A DNA stretch of 64,000 nt from positions 61,690,001-61,754,000 of the forward strand of contig OZ260666.1 in the NCBI GenBank assembly GCA_965285935.1. Reading direction: 5' to 3'. Position 1 is the first letter of the stretch. Each line of letters opens with the position of its first letter. This DNA is from Ophelia neglecta. Lineage: Eukaryota. This document shows, one piece after another, positions 1,315 to 43,300 of this stretch. Below the pieces are notes generated by a model. The model saw only the letters and a program-made list of their open reading frames with translations. It searched no databases and had not been told where the DNA came from. The translations under genes and the position numbers were made by a program.

Positions 1315-4300
1315 GTATTTGGTGGATTTAGTGTTTCATGAAACAAGAGAAACTTCTTATAAAAGTTTTATAGCAGTTTATATTATCTTGTATGAATTTT
1401 TTTCCATACTTGCCTCTAGAGAAGCTGGCTGTAAATATTAAGCTTGCATACAGGAAAATACTGCCTATGAATTACTTATCACTGCTAGGGAACTGTTCTG
1501 TAACACATACCAAATTTAACAGTGAAGGATGTGCATTAGTGATAAAAGACACTAGACCTCCCCTCCTGCACACACACACACTTGTGTGCATTCTCGGGCA
1601 GTTCCTAGCCTCCATTCCTCTATACTCCAGTTTAGAGCCAACATTCAAGAATTTATAATTTTATGCTTTTTTCTCTCCATTTTACCAGGTCCCTTTTTAT
1701 CAGTCTTTTTACTTCAACATCCTATAAAATCTATGTCTCTTATTCCATCTACATTGTATCTTTACCCTACACATTGTTCTCATTCTCTATTTTCTCCAAT
1801 GATTTCATTCATTACAGGTAATTTCCCCAACATAGAAAAAGCAAAAAGTAAGACTATTATCAAGGCAAACGGGCAAGAGCAGGACCGATGATCCCTGATG
1901 AATACTAGTCTCCCATTATACCATTGATTATGAATTTGTTTAACATATAGCTCAAATTGGCTTGCAAGCACATGGCTTCTCATGGACTGAACAAATACTC
2001 TGCATACTCACTTGTGTCACCCTACCTATTGAAATGGACCTCTACATTGATGTACGGTCTTTTAACATTTTGAAAATATTATTGGTCAAAAAATAAAACT
2101 TATTGGGGCTCATAACAAGCTATATCCTCATCATTGCCCTACTGGCCATATGAAAATAGTCTTAAAGAGACTCAGTTTCACACCGCTGTATAACAGGGGT
2201 ACCCCTTTCATGATTAATCCTATCCTGAAATCCTCTAGCTGCACCTTAGATATGTTTTATAACAGCGAGTAAAATTTAATAGCCATCTACTAGTGGCTGG
2301 TTTAAGATATATTCTATGAATAGTTTACTTTAGTACTTATTCTATGTTGTGAAAAAAGGCCTGCAAATCATTTTCAATTTTTGTGACATTCATGTTTCAA
2401 ATAATTAATTTTGATTTGTCATTCATTTTCAGCCAACATCACTATTGTTGATGATTACTGTGGATCTTTTTGCTTTACTTACCCAAATGCCAGTATTTAT
2501 GTAAACTTAATTTTTCATTTGAAAAAAAACATTTATTTTAGTATTTTATATTAAGTAATAATTTTAAGTAAACAACCACTTTACACATGCATATAATAAT
2601 ATTAGGTTACTACTGTATGTAATCCTCCGTCCTTCTGTTGTCTCAATCATATTAGACAGTTTGTTGCTATACCAACAAATGAGAAAAAAAATAGCATCTA
2701 GGAATTTATGCCATGGAAGAAAACACTGTTTTTTGCATAAATATTATGGCAGATCTCTTTGGGTCAGTAGTATAGACAGTGTATTTAACGCTGTGTTGTT
2801 TACTCATTAGACTCGCTGGCACCAGATCAGCCTATTGTTAGGAGAGGCAGTAGAGTACCGGATGATGAAGAAGATGATGAAAGCGCAGTATACTTCAAGG
2901 TCAAACCTAAGAATCAAGTCGTGGTAGAAGGTAGGATAATCATCAAGTCTCTGTGAATACATCTAGTTAATAAACATTAAACAATGGCATAGACAATATA
3001 AAAACATGCTTAATAGTTATATTCTAAAGACTTTCCTACACCTGGTTATTACATTACATTTCAGGACAGCCGTTGTTTGTCGAATGTGTCTTTGCAAAGC
3101 AACCCCCCAAGTTTAACTGGTACCGTGGTATCGGGACAGGCATATTATGTAAAATGGACCCACGTGTGACCCTCACTTACCATGAGGCAGAAATGAATGC
3201 AATCATGGAAATTGCTGCCACAAGGTTTGGAGATGAGGCAAAGTATCAAGTGAAAGTGGAAGAACAAGATGGTCAAATGATTGAATTTGCCGGTTTCTCA
3301 GTCTTTATTAAAGATCCCAAAGATTCTGGTCTGGACTTCAGAGCACTCCTGAGACACAAGTTAGTAGGCACTCCTTCTCAATGAAGCAAAAATAAAAGTT
3401 GTACATGTGATATTTATATGAAGAAATAATCATCTCAAAGAATTTCTTTCCATAGTTTTGCCTGTTTTTTTCAGAGACAAAAGGAAGAGGAAGGGTAAAA
3501 ATGAAGGCCCAGACTGGGGAGACCTACAACACTGTAAGCACAAAGTACATTTATTGTCAGAACAACTTGACACTGTCTATTACACAATAAACCTGAAAAA
3601 ATGTCAAACACCTTTGATGAATGTGAGGCATCCCTCCCAACCTTTTGATTAAGAGGCAAAGGTAGTTAAGAAGTGGGAATAAGGGGTATAAGGTCAAATA
3701 TTTCATTTTGCAAAATGGACATACATGTAGCAGCTACGGGTACATGTGTCAAATACTATATACATAGATTGAGCAAAGTCCTATACATATGTGGTGTAAT
3801 GCAAAATTGAATGATGGCAGGCATTTTATCCCATTTTTCATGCATTTGCCATTTGTAAACTTAACTGTGGAGCATGTTTTTCTTCATGCAGTCTGCCTGA
3901 TGATTTGGGACTGAATTCATGGATTTGTTCTTAATCACAGATTCAGTTTTATTTGACAGGTATCCTTCACCCCCCCCCCCACCCCCCCCCCACCCCCCCC
4001 CCTCCTTCACCCCTATCCCACCCTTTTACCTCTCTGCAAGGAGGCATGTAGTTGGGTTATCCATCAGTATATCAAAAATGGTTTTCATAAATTTCTTTGA
4101 AACTTCATAGGAGGGACATGAGCTGATAAGGTTTTAAGAGAACTGGAAAAAAAGGTGGTTGCCGGAGAGTTTCTGTTAAAGTCGGAATACTTTTGTAACT
4201 TTAAGGGAGTCTAAGATGGGCACTTGTAAAGGACTGATCAAATTTTGGATAAATTCATTAATTTATATTAATTTGAATTAGGGCATATTCAATCTTCTTC

Positions 4301-34300: not shown

Positions 34301-37300
34301 CGGTATATCTTTTTATATTTCCAGGGAGGTAAAGAAATCACTCCAGATAGCCGTATATCTTTCGAGACAAACCCTGGTGATCCTCTTGGGGAGGTTGTGA
34401 TGGTCTGCAAATCTGCGGTGAGAGATGATGAAGGAAAATACAGCATCACCCTAAAGAACCCTAAAGGCCAGGACACCGTATCTGTCAACGTGGCGGTATT
34501 AGGTACATGATCACTTTGTTTAGTACATGGATGTGACAGTATGGCTTGTACGCTCTTATACTTACCACATTATCTGGTATCTAGTCAGTCCAAACTTCGG
34601 GGTAGGGGGTACTTATGAATCACTGTGAACATCTGTCCATCCATTCATCCTTGGTCTTGGGGTAGTACATGTACTTGTTTCTCACAGCAATATTGGATTT
34701 CTCTGAAATTTGAAGAAAATGTTGTGTAGATGTGCATAGATTTAGGAAATTATGCTTTGCCAATTTGTTCAGGTCTAAATATGGTCATTCATACTTATAA
34801 TATTTTAAAAATATTATGATGAGAATAGAATATTTAATAATTTTATGTGATTTTCATAAGTACATCACCTATCCCAATATTTGACAGATTATATTGAAAG
34901 TGGGCAGTGAAAGAACATGTCTGTTATTGGGCATGAGAAAAAGGAGTTGTGTTCCTCACGGCTTTTGAGGCCAATGACGAGTGAAATGTTGGGCATTTTT
35001 CTTTTTTGAGGGGCTCCACTCATTAAGTGGGATATGTCATTTGTTAATCTTATCATGATGTTATATTTTGTTTTGGCAGACAAGCCAGGTGTTCCTGGGG
35101 GACCTCTCGAGGCGTCTAAGGTCACACCCGAGTCTTGTAAGCTGGCCTGGCACCCACCAAAAGATGATGGAGGCTCCCCTATCAGTCACTATGTAGTAGA
35201 GAAGAAGGACAAGTCTTCTGGAAGGTGGACACCAGTCAACAAGTTCTGCCGCACTCCGGAATGTGATGTAGGAGATTTAGATGAGGGAGAAGAATATGAA
35301 TTTCGTGTGGCTGCTGTCAATGACAATGGTACAAGTGAACCACTGGTTACAGATACACCAATTACAGCCAAACATCCATTTGGTAAGACACTTTTATCAA
35401 GGTAGACAACTTCAAATCCACTGAGGGACTTATTGAAAGATGAGCATTATCCTGTGTTAATTGAGACCATTACACTTTGAATGTTCTTGATTTAAATTTA
35501 TTTATTGGATTGACCAATTGAAAATTCTTTTTATACAGACACACCCGATTCTCCGGGAACTCCTGAAATTGACGATGTTGATGAGGACTTTGTCAAGCTC
35601 TCCTGGACTAAACCTAAGAAAGATGGTGGAGATAAAATCATTGGTTATGTAGTGGAAAAGAAGGAGAAGGGTGCTAAAAAATGGACCCCAGTCAATGAAA
35701 GGTTCCCATGTAAGGACACCAAAATAGTGGTCAATGATGTCGAGCCAAACAAGGACTATGAGTTCCGAGTGAGAGCCAAGAACAGGGCTGGTCTTGGTAA
35801 ACCAAGTGAAGAGTCGAAGATGGTCACCACCAAACCAAAACCAAGTAAACAGATTTGGCACTTCAATATTATTGCTTAACACAGCATTTTGTTAAAAACA
35901 ATGCAGTGAGCTCAGATAATTACATGTACATTTTATATTGACCAGAGAAAGCTGGCATGCCTGGAACTCCAACAGTGGAAGATGTCAACAAGAACTCCGT
36001 GGACCTGGCATGGTCAAAACCTAGGAATGATGGTGGAAGTCCCATTAAAGGTATAGTTGTGACAAGGTCAACAAACCTAAAATGGCTGCTCTCAAATGCT
36101 ACATGTTTAATACATGCAGGCAATGTTTTTTTGGAATAAAGACACAAAGTATAATTGTTATTTAATCAACAGGATATCAAATAGAAAAGAAAAAGATTGG
36201 TCAAGACTGGGAGAAGGTCAATGACCGACCAATTCCTACAGAGAGTTTCACAATACCAGATCTTGAAGAGAATGAGGAATATGAATTCCGTGTAGCTGCC
36301 ATCACAGATGCTGGAGTGGGAGAAGAAAGTCTAGCTACTGCTCCAGTCAAAGTCAAGAAAAAAATACGTAAGCTAACAGTTTGCTACAGCTCTGTCAAGA
36401 AAAGAACATGTCAGCTAGCAAATATTATGTCAGATTATATCTTAAATATGGACAGTGATGAAATTTATCTTCAAGAATTTATAACTTAAAAAAACTACCT
36501 CAGAATCATATGGGACCGTCCAGGCGATGTTCATTTTCTATTGGCTACCAGGCATTTTTTATTTTATTTTATTTTTTTAAAGCTGTCACAGTGTCTGTCA
36601 CTAGCAGCAAAATCCTTTCCCTAACCATGTGGCTAAAGTGGGTGTAAAATTCCAGCCAAATATATTAACAAGCCAATTTTTCCACAACCTATATGTTTAA
36701 TACAATGTTTCTGTTTAACTTGGGAAGTTTAAATGTCAGTCGATTAAGGTTTTGGACCCCTACATATATTCTATTACTTTAAACAGCCGAAACAGTCCCA
36801 GAGTTTGACTCCAAACTTCGCAATGCCACTGCTAAGCTAGGCGATGATGCTGTTTTTGAGGTGGAACCAAATGGACATCCTAAACCCACGGTTAAATGGT
36901 AAGCAAATTTAAAACTTATAGTACCTTAACTTGCATGTTTGTTTTAAGTTTGAAAAGATATTAAATATGTCATCAGTTTACCAAGACAACCAATTGTGTA
37001 TAAAGGTACAAGGACGGAGTGCCTATCATTCCTGGTTCCAAGTACCGCATCAAGGAGGATGGAGACAAGGTTCAGCTCATTGTGAAGGATGTAGATGAGG
37101 ATGATGATGGAGAGATCACCTGTGAACTGGTGAACTCCAAGGGACGTGATGAGAGCAAAGCCAAACTCAAAGTCCAAAGTAAGTTTCAATAAAGCAAAAC
37201 TTAAAATAACGAAATGTACAATCTCTTGCAGCTAAGTTTTCTAACTTTGCAGCCTTCACACCTCTCTGTGACCACTCAGACTATAAACGCCTTAATGTTT

Positions 37301-40300: not shown

Positions 40301-43300
40301 ATCAGGCCAGACTCCTTAAAACTAGCGTGGAACCCACCTAAAGATGATGGAGGCTCCCCCGTAAGCCATTATGTAGTAGAGAAGAAGGACAAGTCTTCTG
40401 GCAGGTGGACTCCTGTCAGTAAGTTCTGTCGTCATCCAGAGTGCGACGTGGGAGACCTGGATGAAGGAGAGGACTACGAGTTCCGGGTGTCTGCTGTTAA
40501 TGACAATGGTCAGAGTGAGCCTCTGACTACAACAGGGCCCATCACAGCTAAATATCCTTTTGGTAGGCCTTTATTTACCCAGTTCAATCTGAGTTTGATA
40601 CAAAATATATAAATCTTTCTCCAACCAAGGTGTGGGGCAAAAGTTATAGTTTCCCATAATTCAGAAAAAAATGAAGTATGAATAAATGAAAAGTAATATA
40701 TATTTCTTGGCATTCCTTCTTTAAAACAATCTGAAACTGGTTTCTATGCCGCAATCATAATGAGTCTACTGTGGTCCTTTTTGTAATAGATGTAAATTTG
40801 GTCCTTTCATAGATACTCCCGGATCTCCTGGAGCTCCGGAAATTGATGATGTTGATGAGGACTTTGTCAAACTGTCCTGGACCAAGCCTAGGAAGGATGG
40901 AGGAGACCCTGTCACTGGTTATGTTATAGAGATGAAGGAGGTAGGAGAGAAAAAATGGAAGCCAGTGAATTCCAGGTTTCCTTGCCGAGACACCAAGATG
41001 GTGGTTGGTGATGTCGAGCCAAACAAGGACTACGAGTTCCGTGTCAAGGCTGTAAACAGAGCAGGTCAAGGTTCACCCAGTGATGAGTCGAAGGTGGTCA
41101 CCACTAAACCAAAGCCAAGTTAGTGTTTATACACAAGCTAGATTTAGCTAAATATGTTATTGAGCAGCTGATGTCAATGCTGATAGATAAAAAGACAGAT
41201 AAGGTGTAATATATGTACTTGCTAGTTTGAATAAATTGCACATTGCAGAGAAAGCTGGAATGCCCAGTACACCAAGGGTTGATGATGTGGGTAAAAACAA
41301 TGTTGCCCTGTCATGGGACAAACCAAAAGATGATGGTGGAAGCCCAATAAAAGGTATGATCTCTTTTAAATTGGAAAAGATATGGTGGTTCTGATTTCGT
41401 GTGAATGTATATATTTATGACTATGATCTTATTGAGATGGTTTTGTCAACATTCCCATTTAATTTTCCTAGGATACCAAGTAGAGAAGAAAAAGCCAGGT
41501 GGTGGCTGGGAGAAAGTCAATGACCGTCCAATTCCAGGGGAGAGTTTCACAGTGCCGGATTTAGATGAGGGTGAGGAATATGAATTCCGAGTGGCTGCTG
41601 TCACAGATGCTGGTACCGGAGACCCAAGCTTTGCTACCGCTCCGGTCAAAGTCAAGCAAAAAATACGTGAGCAAATCATATTGTACCCTACAGCAAAGAC
41701 ATTTATTTTAGTAAGCTTCATTTTCATAAATTTCCAATGCAGATCTACCAATATTCCATGATCCTTTTCACTTACAAACAGCTGAGACAGTACCTGAGTT
41801 CAACGCGAAACCTCGTAATGCCACTGCCAAGTTGGGAGAAGACGCAGTGTTTGAGGTAGAGCCAAATGGACATCCCAAGCCAGAAGTCAAGTGGTAAGTA
41901 GTTCTTATTTGAGAATGGTCAGAAGTACTAAAAGTGTGCAGGTAATGCGGGCTACAGTGTGAACATAACACGTTTTCAGTTTACGTGAACAAACTACAAA
42001 TGGACCCAGTAAACTGGCATTGATGCAACATAAACCTAACTGGCTGATTTATGTAGAAAGATGTATAACTTTCTAATTCTTAAAGTATATTAAAGAGCTG
42101 AGGAGGTACATGTATTTATCATTACAATTGACCCAACATGCAATACCATTCGCCATCTGGTGGGCATCGCAGAACTAAGGTTTTGGACTTCCTGGTCGAC
42201 CACTTTTCGCGAGTTACTGCGCAGCCTGCCGCGCAGTTTAAACAGGTGTAGCTTTCTCAGGGCTGACACCGCTCATGGCCTGACAGGCTGTCCCCAGTTA
42301 TTCCACGCGAAGTATTTGGGATCTCCGATGGCAACTCCTCGATAATTGTTCAATTGTTCTGGGTCAAAGTATCTTGAACACAGTGTAGATCTTTTGTTTA
42401 TATTTAATTTGTCCACGATCATGCTGTTTTCCTTCAACGATTTGCCTTCTCTTCGTACCAGGCGCCGCCATCTTGCCACGGCCGCCGGGTCGTCTCGGGG
42501 CCATTTAACCCAAGATATTTCTGCCATCCAAGGATACTTGTCCAGATGGTTAATTTTTCTGCTATGCGAGAAGCACTCTGCTGCCTCGCAGATAAAAACC
42601 ATCTAATGATCTTCCTTTCATTCGTTTGTAACCTCAAAATAACGTTAGACCGCGACGATCTCAGCAGACCATGTAAGACGCCATGCAATGTTTATGAGAG
42701 CTTGGGTACGCCTACTGTTTTGGTCGACTTTTTTCCGCAATGCATTGCGCGATCGTAGTTCTGCGATGCCCACCAGATGGCGAATTGTATTGCAGGTTGG
42801 GTGAATAGGAAGCCTTGTAGTTTTGTACTGCTCACCATATAGTTATTTCTCAACAGGTACAAGGATGGAGTGCCTATCATTCCTGGTGCCAAGTACCGCA
42901 TCAAGGAGGATGGAGACAAGGTTCAGCTCATTGTGAAGGATGTAGATGAGGATGATGATGGAGAGATCACCTGTGAACTGGTCAACTCCAAGGGACGCGA
43001 TGAGACCAAGGCAAAACTCAAAGTCCAAAGTAAGTTTCAATAAAGTGTTGAAAATGCATGCCACCTAAATTAAAAGGAAAGTAGATATGAATCAGTGGAA
43101 TGACCCCTGAAGAAGTCAAAGCAAGGGACACCTGAGAACTTGATAGCCTAGGCCTTCTAACCATGCTGTTGACGGTTGTATCTCAATTTTGCTCAAGGCT
43201 GTAGCTGAGATGTCAAATCTGTCAACTTGGTGTGACGCACCCACCACCCTCCCCCTGCCCAAATACCCTACCACTTCCTTTCAGCCTTCTACTGCTACCC

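What the first reader, a model, noticed from the sequence alone, without database searches (positions are those of the whole stretch)
42129..42804. Compact THAP-only mini-transposon inside an Ig-splitting intron
Seen: 670 bp, 46-bp TIRs beginning CCCAAC, TGA duplication, high CpG content (young insertion), absent from the equivalent short introns of copies A and C. It carries an antisense 109-aa THAP-like ORF with its own ATG and no catalytic domain. The His ligand reads TAC (one C>T from CAC). The stop TGA could be a deaminated CGA, since the frame stays open after it (AVSALRKLHLFKLRGRL...). Knowledge: a 3-bp TNA duplication suggests the PIF/Harbinger group and does not fit THAP-bearing P (8 bp) or Kolobok (TTAA) elements, while CCCA ends look more like animal CMC/EnSpm. 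Inference: a possibly undescribed family, or a KP-like deletion derivative that encodes only a DNA-binding repressor.
Basis: partly seen in the sequence, partly recalled or inferred. Interest (0 to 1): 0.75.

Follow-up and report, generated by a model that had tools for sequence, protein, structure and literature searches.

The report
Broken ISL2EU transposon in Ig-gene intron
This is an ordinary, defective short copy of a known kind of cut-and-paste jumping gene (the ISL2EU group) sitting in an intron, and the small DNA-binding gene it carries is a broken leftover of the transposase gene.

Summary
The element is real, but the TGA duplication is not. It spans window 42129-42804 (676 bp). An allele without the element, found in public contigs, reads ttacAATAgg. 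The insertion therefore added 676 bp plus a 2-bp AT duplication inside an AAT(T/A) target, which is the ISL2EU signature. The genome holds about 34 copies of this subfamily and about 260 of an 80%-identical one. One 3,444-bp copy with the same ends shows that the short copies are independent internal deletions (15 junction classes). That long copy keeps a SAP/SWIM/YqaJ-exonuclease gene convergent with the THAP exon. Public relatives of the THAP ORF are THAP-HTH-DDE_Tnp_4 transposases. Sister copies read CAC (His) where the window reads TAC, and CGA where it reads TGA. The ORF evolved under selection between subfamilies (dN/dS 0.14) but decays neutrally within copies. The youngest lineage spread with a lost zinc ligand and a premature stop, so a KP-like repressor role is unsupported. 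No copy with a DDE domain was found for this family. Verdict: a non-autonomous member of a known group, of low interest.

The parts
42127..42128 (.). Left copy of the 2-bp target-site duplication (AT), preceded by A at 42126 (target c-A|AT|A-g).
   Evidence: The empty allele joins 42125 to 42804 and skips 678 = 676 + 2. AT sits on the left in 22 of 23 subfamily-1 copies.
42129..42804 (-). Non-autonomous ISL2EU-group element, 676 bp, TGACCC...GGGTGA. Strand is given by the THAP gene, which is antisense to the host gene.
42129..42177 (+). Left terminal inverted repeat, 49 nt. Base 2 is G against C in the right arm, and 42138 carries a private A.
42129..42246 (+). Left arm. It matches the first ~116 nt of the 3,444-bp copy (L031:1001-1116), which lie upstream of the SAP/SWIM/YqaJ gene. 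The internal deletion junction is at about 42246/42247.
   Evidence: The junction class 116|2896 is shared by 9 of 24 subfamily-1 copies.
42273..42602 (-). Relic of the first (THAP) exon of the transposase gene, 109 codons. Zinc ligands are C5, C10, C75 and Y78 (was His).
42369..42371 (-). Codon 78, TAC (Tyr). Sister copies have CAC or CAT (His, the fourth zinc ligand).
42270..42272 (-). TGA stop. It reads CGA in 22 of 27 other subfamily-1 rows, so it is a CpG transition.
42756..42804 (-). Right terminal inverted repeat, 49 nt.
42805..42806 (.). Right copy of the 2-bp duplication (AT), followed here by A (42807) where most copies have T.
   Evidence: Contigs from other copies diverge just after 42806 (table 7).
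41896..42857 (+). Host intron that splits an I-set Ig domain. It is about 962 bp with the element. The equivalent introns of the paralogous units are about 106 and 135 bp.

Best explanation
Window 42129-42804 is a defective, non-autonomous internal-deletion copy of an ISL2EU-group DNA transposon (PHIS / Harbinger-like superfamily).

A full element of this group carries two convergent genes between inverted ends: a THAP-HTH-DDE transposase and a SAP/SWIM/YqaJ-exonuclease protein. Here everything between about 116 nt of the left end and about 550 nt of the right end was lost, most likely by abortive gap repair (inferred). What remains is the two ends and the first exon (THAP) of the transposase gene.

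The copy can only move, or have moved, if a related DDE transposase is supplied in trans (inferred). It entered an AAT(A) site with a 2-bp AT duplication (shown). The insertion is still polymorphic in the one sample available (shown). Its THAP ORF is a dead relic with His78 changed to Tyr and CGA changed to TGA (shown).
For: (1) Ends and target.
- In 23 of 23 subfamily-1 copies the element starts TGA.
- AT lies on both sides in 21 of 23. A is at -3 in 22 of 23, and T is at +3 in 20 of 23.
- Subfamily 2 reads TGACC...GGTCA in 12 of 12, with AT on both sides in 9 of 12.

(2) Empty allele.
- A 221-nt contig in each of 3 runs of one sample joins 42125 to 42804. It skips 678 nt, with 3 letters ambiguous.
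- The filled-junction contig is also present.
- The left flank is unique in the assembly, 1 of 1 candidate.

(3) The long copy.
- L031:1001-4444 has the same ends. All 24 subfamily-1 short copies map to it as left arm plus right arm, in 15 junction classes.

(4) Gene content of L031.
- It carries a THAP ORF with CSRHF (28.4 bits against the 23.9 cut-off) and a YqaJ exon (30.8 bits against 22).
- Its plus-strand gene is colinear with the SAP and SWIM/YqaJ ORFs of a complete ISL2EU copy in the same genome, L055. The tblastn E-values are 4e-21, 2e-17 and 4e-22.
- L055 has THAP, HTH_Tnp_4, DDE_Tnp_4, YqaJ and SAP. Its flanks read cAAT|...|ATTg.

(5) Public relatives of the THAP ORF.
- P0025 (605 aa, 53% identity, E 9e-13) and P0042 (586 aa) carry THAP + HTH_Tnp_4 + DDE_Tnp_4. 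P0003 (62% identity) and P0018 carry HTH_Tnp_4.

(6) Published definition of ISL2EU.
- AT duplication in A|AT|T, a THAP-HTH-DDE transposase plus a YqaJ protein, animals only (passages of PMC4482050, PMC4122938 and PMC9179366).

(7) Selection pattern.
- dN/dS is 0.14 between subfamilies and about 0.87 within subfamily 1.
Against: - No copy of this family with an HTH or DDE part was found in the assembly.
  - L031 has no DDE remnant.
  - Its interior occurs only in L031 and in the partial copy L034.
  - None of the 108 scored matches (of 554 candidates) to P0003 reaches its HTH region.
  - The best DDE match to P0025 is the unrelated L055 family, at 47%.
  - These searches score only the best candidates, so they are not exhaustive.
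- The inverted repeats start TG, not the 'usually GG' stated for ISL2EU.
- The choice of a 2-bp rather than a 4-bp duplication rests on one empty allele plus the symmetry of the ends.
- Three subfamily-2 copies have AATT on both sides.
- Every derivative keeps the whole THAP domain while the left arm is much shorter. Passive loss does not predict this.
Confidence: 0.88

Rival explanations
1. The short THAP-only elements are kept because their product acts as a KP-like repressor or competitor of the family's transposase. In that case the ORF is functional in many copies, though not in this one.
For: - All 24 subfamily-1 derivatives, plus subfamilies 2 and 3, keep the complete THAP domain. Right-hand breakpoints cluster just past it (2717-3001 of 3444), while left arms are only 101-292 nt.
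- dN/dS is 0.14 between subfamilies.
- 16 of 27 subfamily-1 rows keep an ORF of at least 109 aa.
- Most public relatives are short THAP-only predicted proteins.
Against: - Within subfamily 1, dN/dS is about 0.87.
- 11 of 27 subfamily-1 rows are broken.
- In subfamily 2, 6 of 11 share a stop at codon 44 and 5 of 11 share C5F (a lost zinc ligand). The 98-99% identical, youngest copies carry both.
- The window copy lacks His78.
- The low dN/dS between subfamilies is expected if they diverged as autonomous elements.
- No RNA data were available.
Confidence: 0.07
2. The 3.4-kb form is a complete, DDE-less autonomous element that moves with its THAP protein and the YqaJ-type nuclease.
For: - No DDE was found for this family in the assembly.
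- Every short copy derives from sequence present in L031.
- The family was active recently. Subfamily-2 copies reach 99% identity, and the window insertion is polymorphic.
Against: - The closest long public relatives of the THAP ORF are fused to HTH_Tnp_4 and DDE_Tnp_4.
- The AT duplication and AATT target match those of DDE-bearing ISL2EU copies in the same genome.
- L031 is a single copy with a premature stop in its THAP ORF.
- ISL2EU autonomous elements average about 4.8 kb, so L031 is about the size expected after loss of the HTH-DDE part.
Confidence: 0.03
3. One reading: a PIF/Harbinger-like or new-superfamily element with a 3-bp TNA (TGA) duplication.
For: TGA appears on both sides of CCCAAC...GTTGGG in 22 of 23 subfamily-1 copies.
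Against: - TGA is always in the same orientation relative to the element, which a symmetric target choice would not give.
- Subfamily 2 has TGA...TCA in 12 of 12.
- The empty allele AATA has no TGA.
- The second gene is YqaJ, not Myb/SANT.
Confidence: 0.01

Closest known systems
ISL2EU group of the PHIS (PIF/Harbinger-ISL2EU-Spy) superfamily
   Same: - AT duplication in an A|AT|T target.
- THAP at the N-terminus of the transposase.
- A convergent second gene with a YqaJ exonuclease domain.
- Inverted-repeat length within the stated 6-259 bp.
- An animal host.

   Different: - No HTH or DDE part in any copy of this family in this assembly.
- The inverted repeats start TG, not GG.
- The family consists almost entirely of 0.62-0.86-kb derivatives that keep the THAP exon.
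- I could not check whether this family is already in Repbase or Dfam.
The complete ISL2EU family in the same genome (L055:812-6935; copies in L054, L056 and C3:289714)
   Same: Same gene order and convergent orientation, the same AAT|...|ATT flanks, and homologous THAP, SAP/SWIM and YqaJ parts.
   Different: - Only 25-43% protein identity.
- Different inverted repeats (AGCGCG...).
- It carries the HTH_Tnp_4 + DDE_Tnp_4 ORF that the window's family lacks.
PIF/Harbinger sensu stricto and its MITEs (Tourist, mPing)
   Same: Same superfamily. Short derivatives are mobilised in trans, and the target is palindromic and AT-rich.
   Different: PIF/Harbinger makes a 3-bp TWA duplication and has a Myb/SANT second gene. 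Here the duplication is 2-bp AT and the second gene is YqaJ.
KP elements of the Drosophila P element (recalled, not from a call)
   Same: An internal deletion leaves the THAP-bearing N-terminus of the transposase as the only ORF.
   Different: P elements make 8-bp duplications and have a different catalytic domain. KP repressor activity has been demonstrated, whereas here the ORFs decay.

Membership tests
ISL2EU (PHIS superfamily) | 2-bp AT target-site duplication within target A|AT|T | tested here: met
   The empty allele ttacAATAgg against the filled AAT|TGACCC...GGGTGA|ATA gives 678 = 676 + 2. AT lies on both sides in 21 of 23 subfamily-1 copies and 9 of 12 subfamily-2 copies. The definition is from passages of PMC4482050.
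ISL2EU (PHIS superfamily) | Transposase with an N-terminal THAP domain | tested here: met
   Pfam THAP is above the cut-off in 6 of 6 sister ORFs and in L031. The window copy scores 17.5 bits, below the cut-off, because His78 is Tyr.
ISL2EU (PHIS superfamily) | HTH + DDE (DDE_Tnp_4) catalytic part in the same protein | tested here: inconclusive
   Absent from every copy of this family found in the assembly. Present in the closest long public relatives of the THAP ORF: P0025, P0042, and P0003 and P0018 with the HTH only. A non-autonomous copy is not expected to have it.
ISL2EU (PHIS superfamily) | Second ORF with a YqaJ exonuclease domain | tested here: met
   L031:2331-2807 scores 30.8 bits for YqaJ against a cut-off of 22. 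It is colinear with the L055 second gene. This gene is not present in the window copy itself.
ISL2EU (PHIS superfamily) | Inverted repeats of 6-259 bp, usually starting GG | tested here: inconclusive
   The 49-nt inverted repeats are within range, but they start TG. The paper says 'usually'.
PIF/Harbinger sensu stricto | 3-bp TWA duplication and a Myb/SANT second ORF | tested here: not met
   The duplication is 2-bp AT and the second gene is YqaJ.
Spy | No duplication; insertion within AAATTT | tested here: not met
   The empty allele shows a net gain of 2 bp beyond the symmetric element. The target is AATT or AATA.
P element / KP | 7-8-bp duplication and a P-type transposase | tested here: not met
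   The flanks show only AT. Long relatives carry DDE_Tnp_4. The 8-bp figure is recalled.
Kolobok / piggyBac | TTAA duplication | tested here: not met
   The flanks are AAT...ATT, never TTAA, in 35 of 35 copies. The TTAA rule is recalled.

The most novel reading that the evidence does not exclude
The family persists as THAP-only mini-elements because a THAP-only product is useful, as a repressor of the family's transposase or as a host-level benefit. That would explain three observations: 15 or more independent deletions all stop just past the THAP domain; three diverged subfamilies share this architecture; and the ORF shows dN/dS of 0.14 between subfamilies even though no DDE-bearing master is left in the assembly.
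Probability: 0.07. Interest if true: 0.5.

Novelty: new member of a known kind. Interest (0 to 1): 0.2.

Why it matters
The main value is for annotation. It corrects a mis-parsed duplication and places roughly 300 copies in this genome in a known but little-studied group. It also shows that the insertion in the Ig-repeat gene is a segregating polymorphism with a recoverable empty site.

For transposon specialists there are two modest points of interest:
- An ISL2EU family appears to have been active recently, yet no DDE-bearing master is visible in the assembly.
- All of its deletion derivatives keep the THAP exon.

Tried and rejected
- **3-bp TGA duplication.** Rejected.
- **4-bp AATT duplication with an element GACC...GGTC.** I held this. 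I dropped it because the empty allele is AATA while the left flank reads AATT.
- **Site-specific recombinase with a TGA core.** I considered this because TGA always has the same orientation. I dropped it once subfamily 2 showed TGA...TCA and no recombinase gene appeared.
- **No-duplication, Spy-like reading.** Rejected.
- **Search for an autonomous partner.**
  - Orphan ends were fetched. They gave one long copy (L031), one partial copy (L034), truncated copies, and a relative interrupted by a hAT-like ORF (L036).
  - Searches of the genome with the YqaJ exon, the interior DNA, P0003 and P0025 found no DDE for this family.
  - The P0003 search was swamped by THAP-only copies, with 108 of 554 candidates scored.
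- **Paralogous introns as an empty site.** They were not alignable.
- **Post-THAP tail of L031 against P0003.** No alignment.
- **Earlier findings of this scan.** The word look-up was blank.
- **Not done.**
  - No Repbase or Dfam check, because no tool offers it.
  - No RNA evidence, because no RNA run was listed.
  - The supplements of PMC4482050 (family tables, duplication logos, empty sites) were closed. They may list a related family.
  - Exons of the L031 second gene were searched one by one and never joined.
  - No consensus of the family was built.
- **Rows dropped from the codon counts.** L001 (the window itself); L023 and L025 (the same places as L011 and L031); and the partial matches L029, L033, L035, L036, L037, L040 and L043.
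Full report
**What is at the coordinates.**
- The stretch 42129-42804 is bounded by inverted repeats. The repeat finder gives arms 42122-42177 and 42756-42811, 56 nt, 91% complementary.
- It contains the antisense 109-codon ORF 42273-42602.
- It lies in the intron between two halves of an I-set Ig domain. The downstream exon 42858-43034 matches I-set profile positions 35-90 at 41.8 bits.
- The equivalent introns of the two paralogous units are about 106 and 135 bp and have no element. I confirmed only the Ig exon.
- CpG observed/expected is 1.0 in the element, 0.38 and 0.20 in the 2-kb flanks, and 0.28 over the whole window.

**It is a repeat family.**
- A search of the window's own genome (762 Mb) with the 670-bp core gave 105 matches, with 40 of 336 candidates scored. 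Full-length copies fall at 89-96% identity, and a second set at about 80%.
- A 29-nt end pattern with up to 3 mismatches hits 68 places (35 forward, 33 reverse; reversed control 0). That means about 34 copies of subfamily 1.
- The subfamily-2 end pattern hits 518 places (261 and 257; control 0), or about 260 copies.
- The 11 other subfamily-2 copies compared are 95.7-99.1% identical to L030.

**The TGA 'duplication' is the element's own ends.**
- In subfamily 1 every copy is flanked (c)AAT TGA CCCAAC ... GTTGGG TGA ATT (g/a).
- TGA always has the same orientation relative to the element, which a symmetric target choice would not give.
- In subfamily 2 all 12 of 12 copies read AAT TGACC ... GGTCA ATT, so the three bases are inverted and not direct. 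TGA/TGA in subfamily 1 is a G/C mismatch at base 2 of the inverted repeat.
- With the element defined as TGACC...GGT(G/C)A, the 23 subfamily-1 copies give these counts:
  - AT immediately to the left in 22, and to the right in 22.
  - AT on both sides in 21.
  - A at -3 in 22, T at +3 in 20, and C at -4 in 18.
- In subfamily 2, AT lies on both sides in 9 of 12.

**An empty allele settles the matter.**
- Only three runs, all from one sample, hold this stretch. They are kept as contigs.
- When these were laid on 41700-43100, each run gave a 221-nt contig that joins 42125 to 42804. It skips 678 nt, with 3 letters that fit either side.
- That contig differs from the window at 5 letters in its 106 left-flank letters and at none in its 115 right-flank letters.
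- A separate 137-nt contig spans the filled left junction without any difference.
- The left flank occurs once in the assembly, so the joined contig is an allele and not a paralogue.
- The empty site reads ttac-AATA-gg. The filled site reads ttacAAT|TGACCC...GGGTGA|ATAgg.
- The only end-symmetric solution is a 676-bp element plus a 2-bp AT duplication in the target A|AT|A.
  - A TGA duplication is excluded because the empty site has no TGA.
  - A 4-bp AATT duplication would need the left copy to read AATA.
- I cannot tell whether the empty allele never had the element or lost it by precise excision. I also cannot tell whether the sample is the one the assembly came from.

**The short copies are deletion derivatives.**
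- One pair of ends lies 3,444 bp apart (L031:1001-4444).
- All 24 subfamily-1 short copies map onto it as a left arm plus a right arm. The arms are 89-100% identical to L031, and 94% or more in every copy except L028 (89% left arm).
- They fall into 15 junction classes. Left breakpoints lie at 101-292 and right breakpoints at 2717-3001.
- The window's class (116|2896) is shared by 9 of the 24.
- One junction (153|2926, at a 4-nt TGGC microhomology) occurs both in L014 and in subfamily 2.

**Gene content of the long copy and of a complete relative.**
- L031 carries on the minus strand the THAP ORF with CSRHF (28.4 bits against the cut-off of 23.9).
- On the plus strand it carries a multi-exon gene whose third ORF is a YqaJ-like exonuclease (30.8 bits against 22).
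- That gene is colinear with the SAP and SWIM/YqaJ ORFs of L055 in the same genome. The tblastn E-values are 4e-21, 2e-17 and 4e-22.
- L055:812-6935 is a complete element. It has THAP (49.5 bits), HTH_Tnp_4 (37), DDE_Tnp_4 (145.6), and convergent YqaJ (63.7) and SAP (30). Its flanks read cAAT|AGCGCG...CGCGCT|ATTg.
- I searched the exons one by one and did not join them.

**What kind it is.**
- Passages of Han et al. 2015 (PMC4482050) define the ISL2EU group as follows:
  - AT duplications with a conserved A before and T after (target A|AT|T).
  - Two ORFs: a DDE-HTH-THAP transposase and a YqaJ-domain protein.
  - Inverted repeats of 6-259 bp, usually starting GG.
  - Autonomous length of about 4.84 kb.
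  - Animals only.
- Passages of PMC4122938 and PMC9179366 say the same.
- A search of 1.84 billion representative proteins with the first 119 residues of an intact sister ORF gave 84 hits at E up to 0.001. Most are short.
- I scanned 10 of these 84 with Pfam, taking mainly the longest.
  - P0025 (605 aa, 53% identity, E 9e-13) and P0042 (586 aa) have THAP + HTH_Tnp_4 + DDE_Tnp_4.
  - P0018 has THAP + HTH_Tnp_4, and P0003 (62% identity) has HTH_Tnp_4.
  - P0037 has a sub-threshold HTH_Tnp_4 match (24.4 bits against a cut-off of 27).
  - Three have THAP alone.
  - Two are unrelated TPR proteins.
- The ORF is therefore the N-terminal exon of an ISL2EU-type transposase.

- Among 27 other subfamily-1 rows, the Tyr78 codon reads CAC in 25 and is gapped in 2. 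In subfamily 2 it is CAT in 11 of 11.
- The stop codon reads CGA in 22 subfamily-1 rows, TGA in 1, CGC in 1, and is gapped in 3. In subfamily 2 it is TGA in 11 of 11.
- The window's Pfam THAP score (17.5 bits, E 0.007, below the cut-off) rises to 25.2-30.6 bits in 6 of 6 sister ORFs.
- The open frame after the stop crosses the deletion junction into the antisense of the left arm. In short copies it means nothing.

**Is the THAP-only ORF functional?**
- Between subfamilies, dN/dS is 0.14 with dS of about 0.6, over 24 pairs of real copies. Within subfamily 1, dN and dS are 0.026 and 0.030.
- In subfamily 1, 16 of 27 rows keep at least 109 codons and 11 are broken.
- In subfamily 2, 6 of 11 share a stop at codon 44 and 5 of 11 share C5F. 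The youngest copies carry both.
- This is the usual picture for transposons. Selection acts on the coding master lineages, and copies decay neutrally once inserted.
- One observation remains unexplained by passive loss. Every derivative keeps the whole THAP domain while the left arms are much shorter. I give the repressor idea about 7%.

**What is missing.**
- No HTH or DDE part belongs to this family in the assembly.
  - L031 has no DDE remnant.
  - Its YqaJ exon has no close second copy; the next best match is 33%.
  - Its interior DNA occurs only in L031 and the partial copy L034.
  - No match to P0003 reaches its HTH region (108 of 554 candidates scored).
  - The best DDE match to P0025 is the L055 family at 47% (72 of 652 candidates scored).
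- The genome does hold many other DDE_Tnp_4 loci, at least 105 matches.
- The source of transposase for the recent activity is therefore unknown. The master may be absent from this haplotype, it may be lost, or a related family may cross-mobilise these copies.

**Verdict.** This is a real element of a known kind. The family may or may not be catalogued; I could not search Repbase or Dfam. A paper search for ISL2EU together with THAP, non-autonomous, MITE or deletion derivative returned 73 papers holding at least 3 of the 5 terms. Among the 15 listed, only the Spy paper mentions ISL2EU.

Noticed in passing
L055:812-6935 (also L054, L056 and G000:C3:289714-290898): A complete 6.1-kb ISL2EU family with open THAP, HTH+DDE_Tnp_4, SAP and SWIM/YqaJ frames. 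Its 395-codon DDE frame is open in all three copies, which are 96-100% identical at the protein level. It may still be active.
   Followed up: partly
G000 genome-wide: At least 105 matches to an ISL2EU DDE ORF (336 candidates), in many distinct identity classes. Several are paired with convergent YqaJ hits. The genome is rich in ISL2EU / PHIS families.
   Followed up: no
L047:493-1168, L049:490-1165, L050:490-1165: Three subfamily-2 copies are flanked on both sides by 16-30 nt fragments of the family's own inverted repeat in tail-to-head order, with AATT on each side (GGTC-AATT-[element]-AATT-GACC). This does not fit a simple AT duplication and is unexplained.
   Followed up: partly
L014:1501-2167 and subfamily 2 (L030, L048): The same deletion junction (153|2926 of the long copy, at a TGGC microhomology) occurs in a subfamily-1 copy that is 98-99% identical to L031 and in the 80%-identical subfamily 2. 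It is either a recurrent deletion or exchange between subfamilies.
   Followed up: partly
L036:3864-5597: A diverged relative of the element is interrupted by a 578-codon ORF that looks like a hAT-type transposase. This is judged by eye from BED-like and C-terminal motifs and was not scanned.
   Followed up: no
L011:914-2129: Two partial copies of the element lie head to tail, one base apart. Both carry the same internal deletion across the His codon.
   Followed up: no
window 42020-42125 vs 42804-42918: The empty-allele contig differs from the assembly at 5 of 106 letters left of the insertion and at 0 of 115 letters to the right. The two haplotypes are unusually divergent on one side.
   Followed up: no
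window 36781-37194 vs 41776-43045: Between paralogous units A and B the exon downstream of the intron is 96% identical, but the upstream exon is only 77% identical. This fits an exchange boundary near this intron.
   Followed up: no
L035:2-4107: A third, roughly 75%-identical short subfamily copy lies next to two long reverse-strand open frames (609 and 792 codons) that look retroelement-like by eye. They were not scanned.
   Followed up: no
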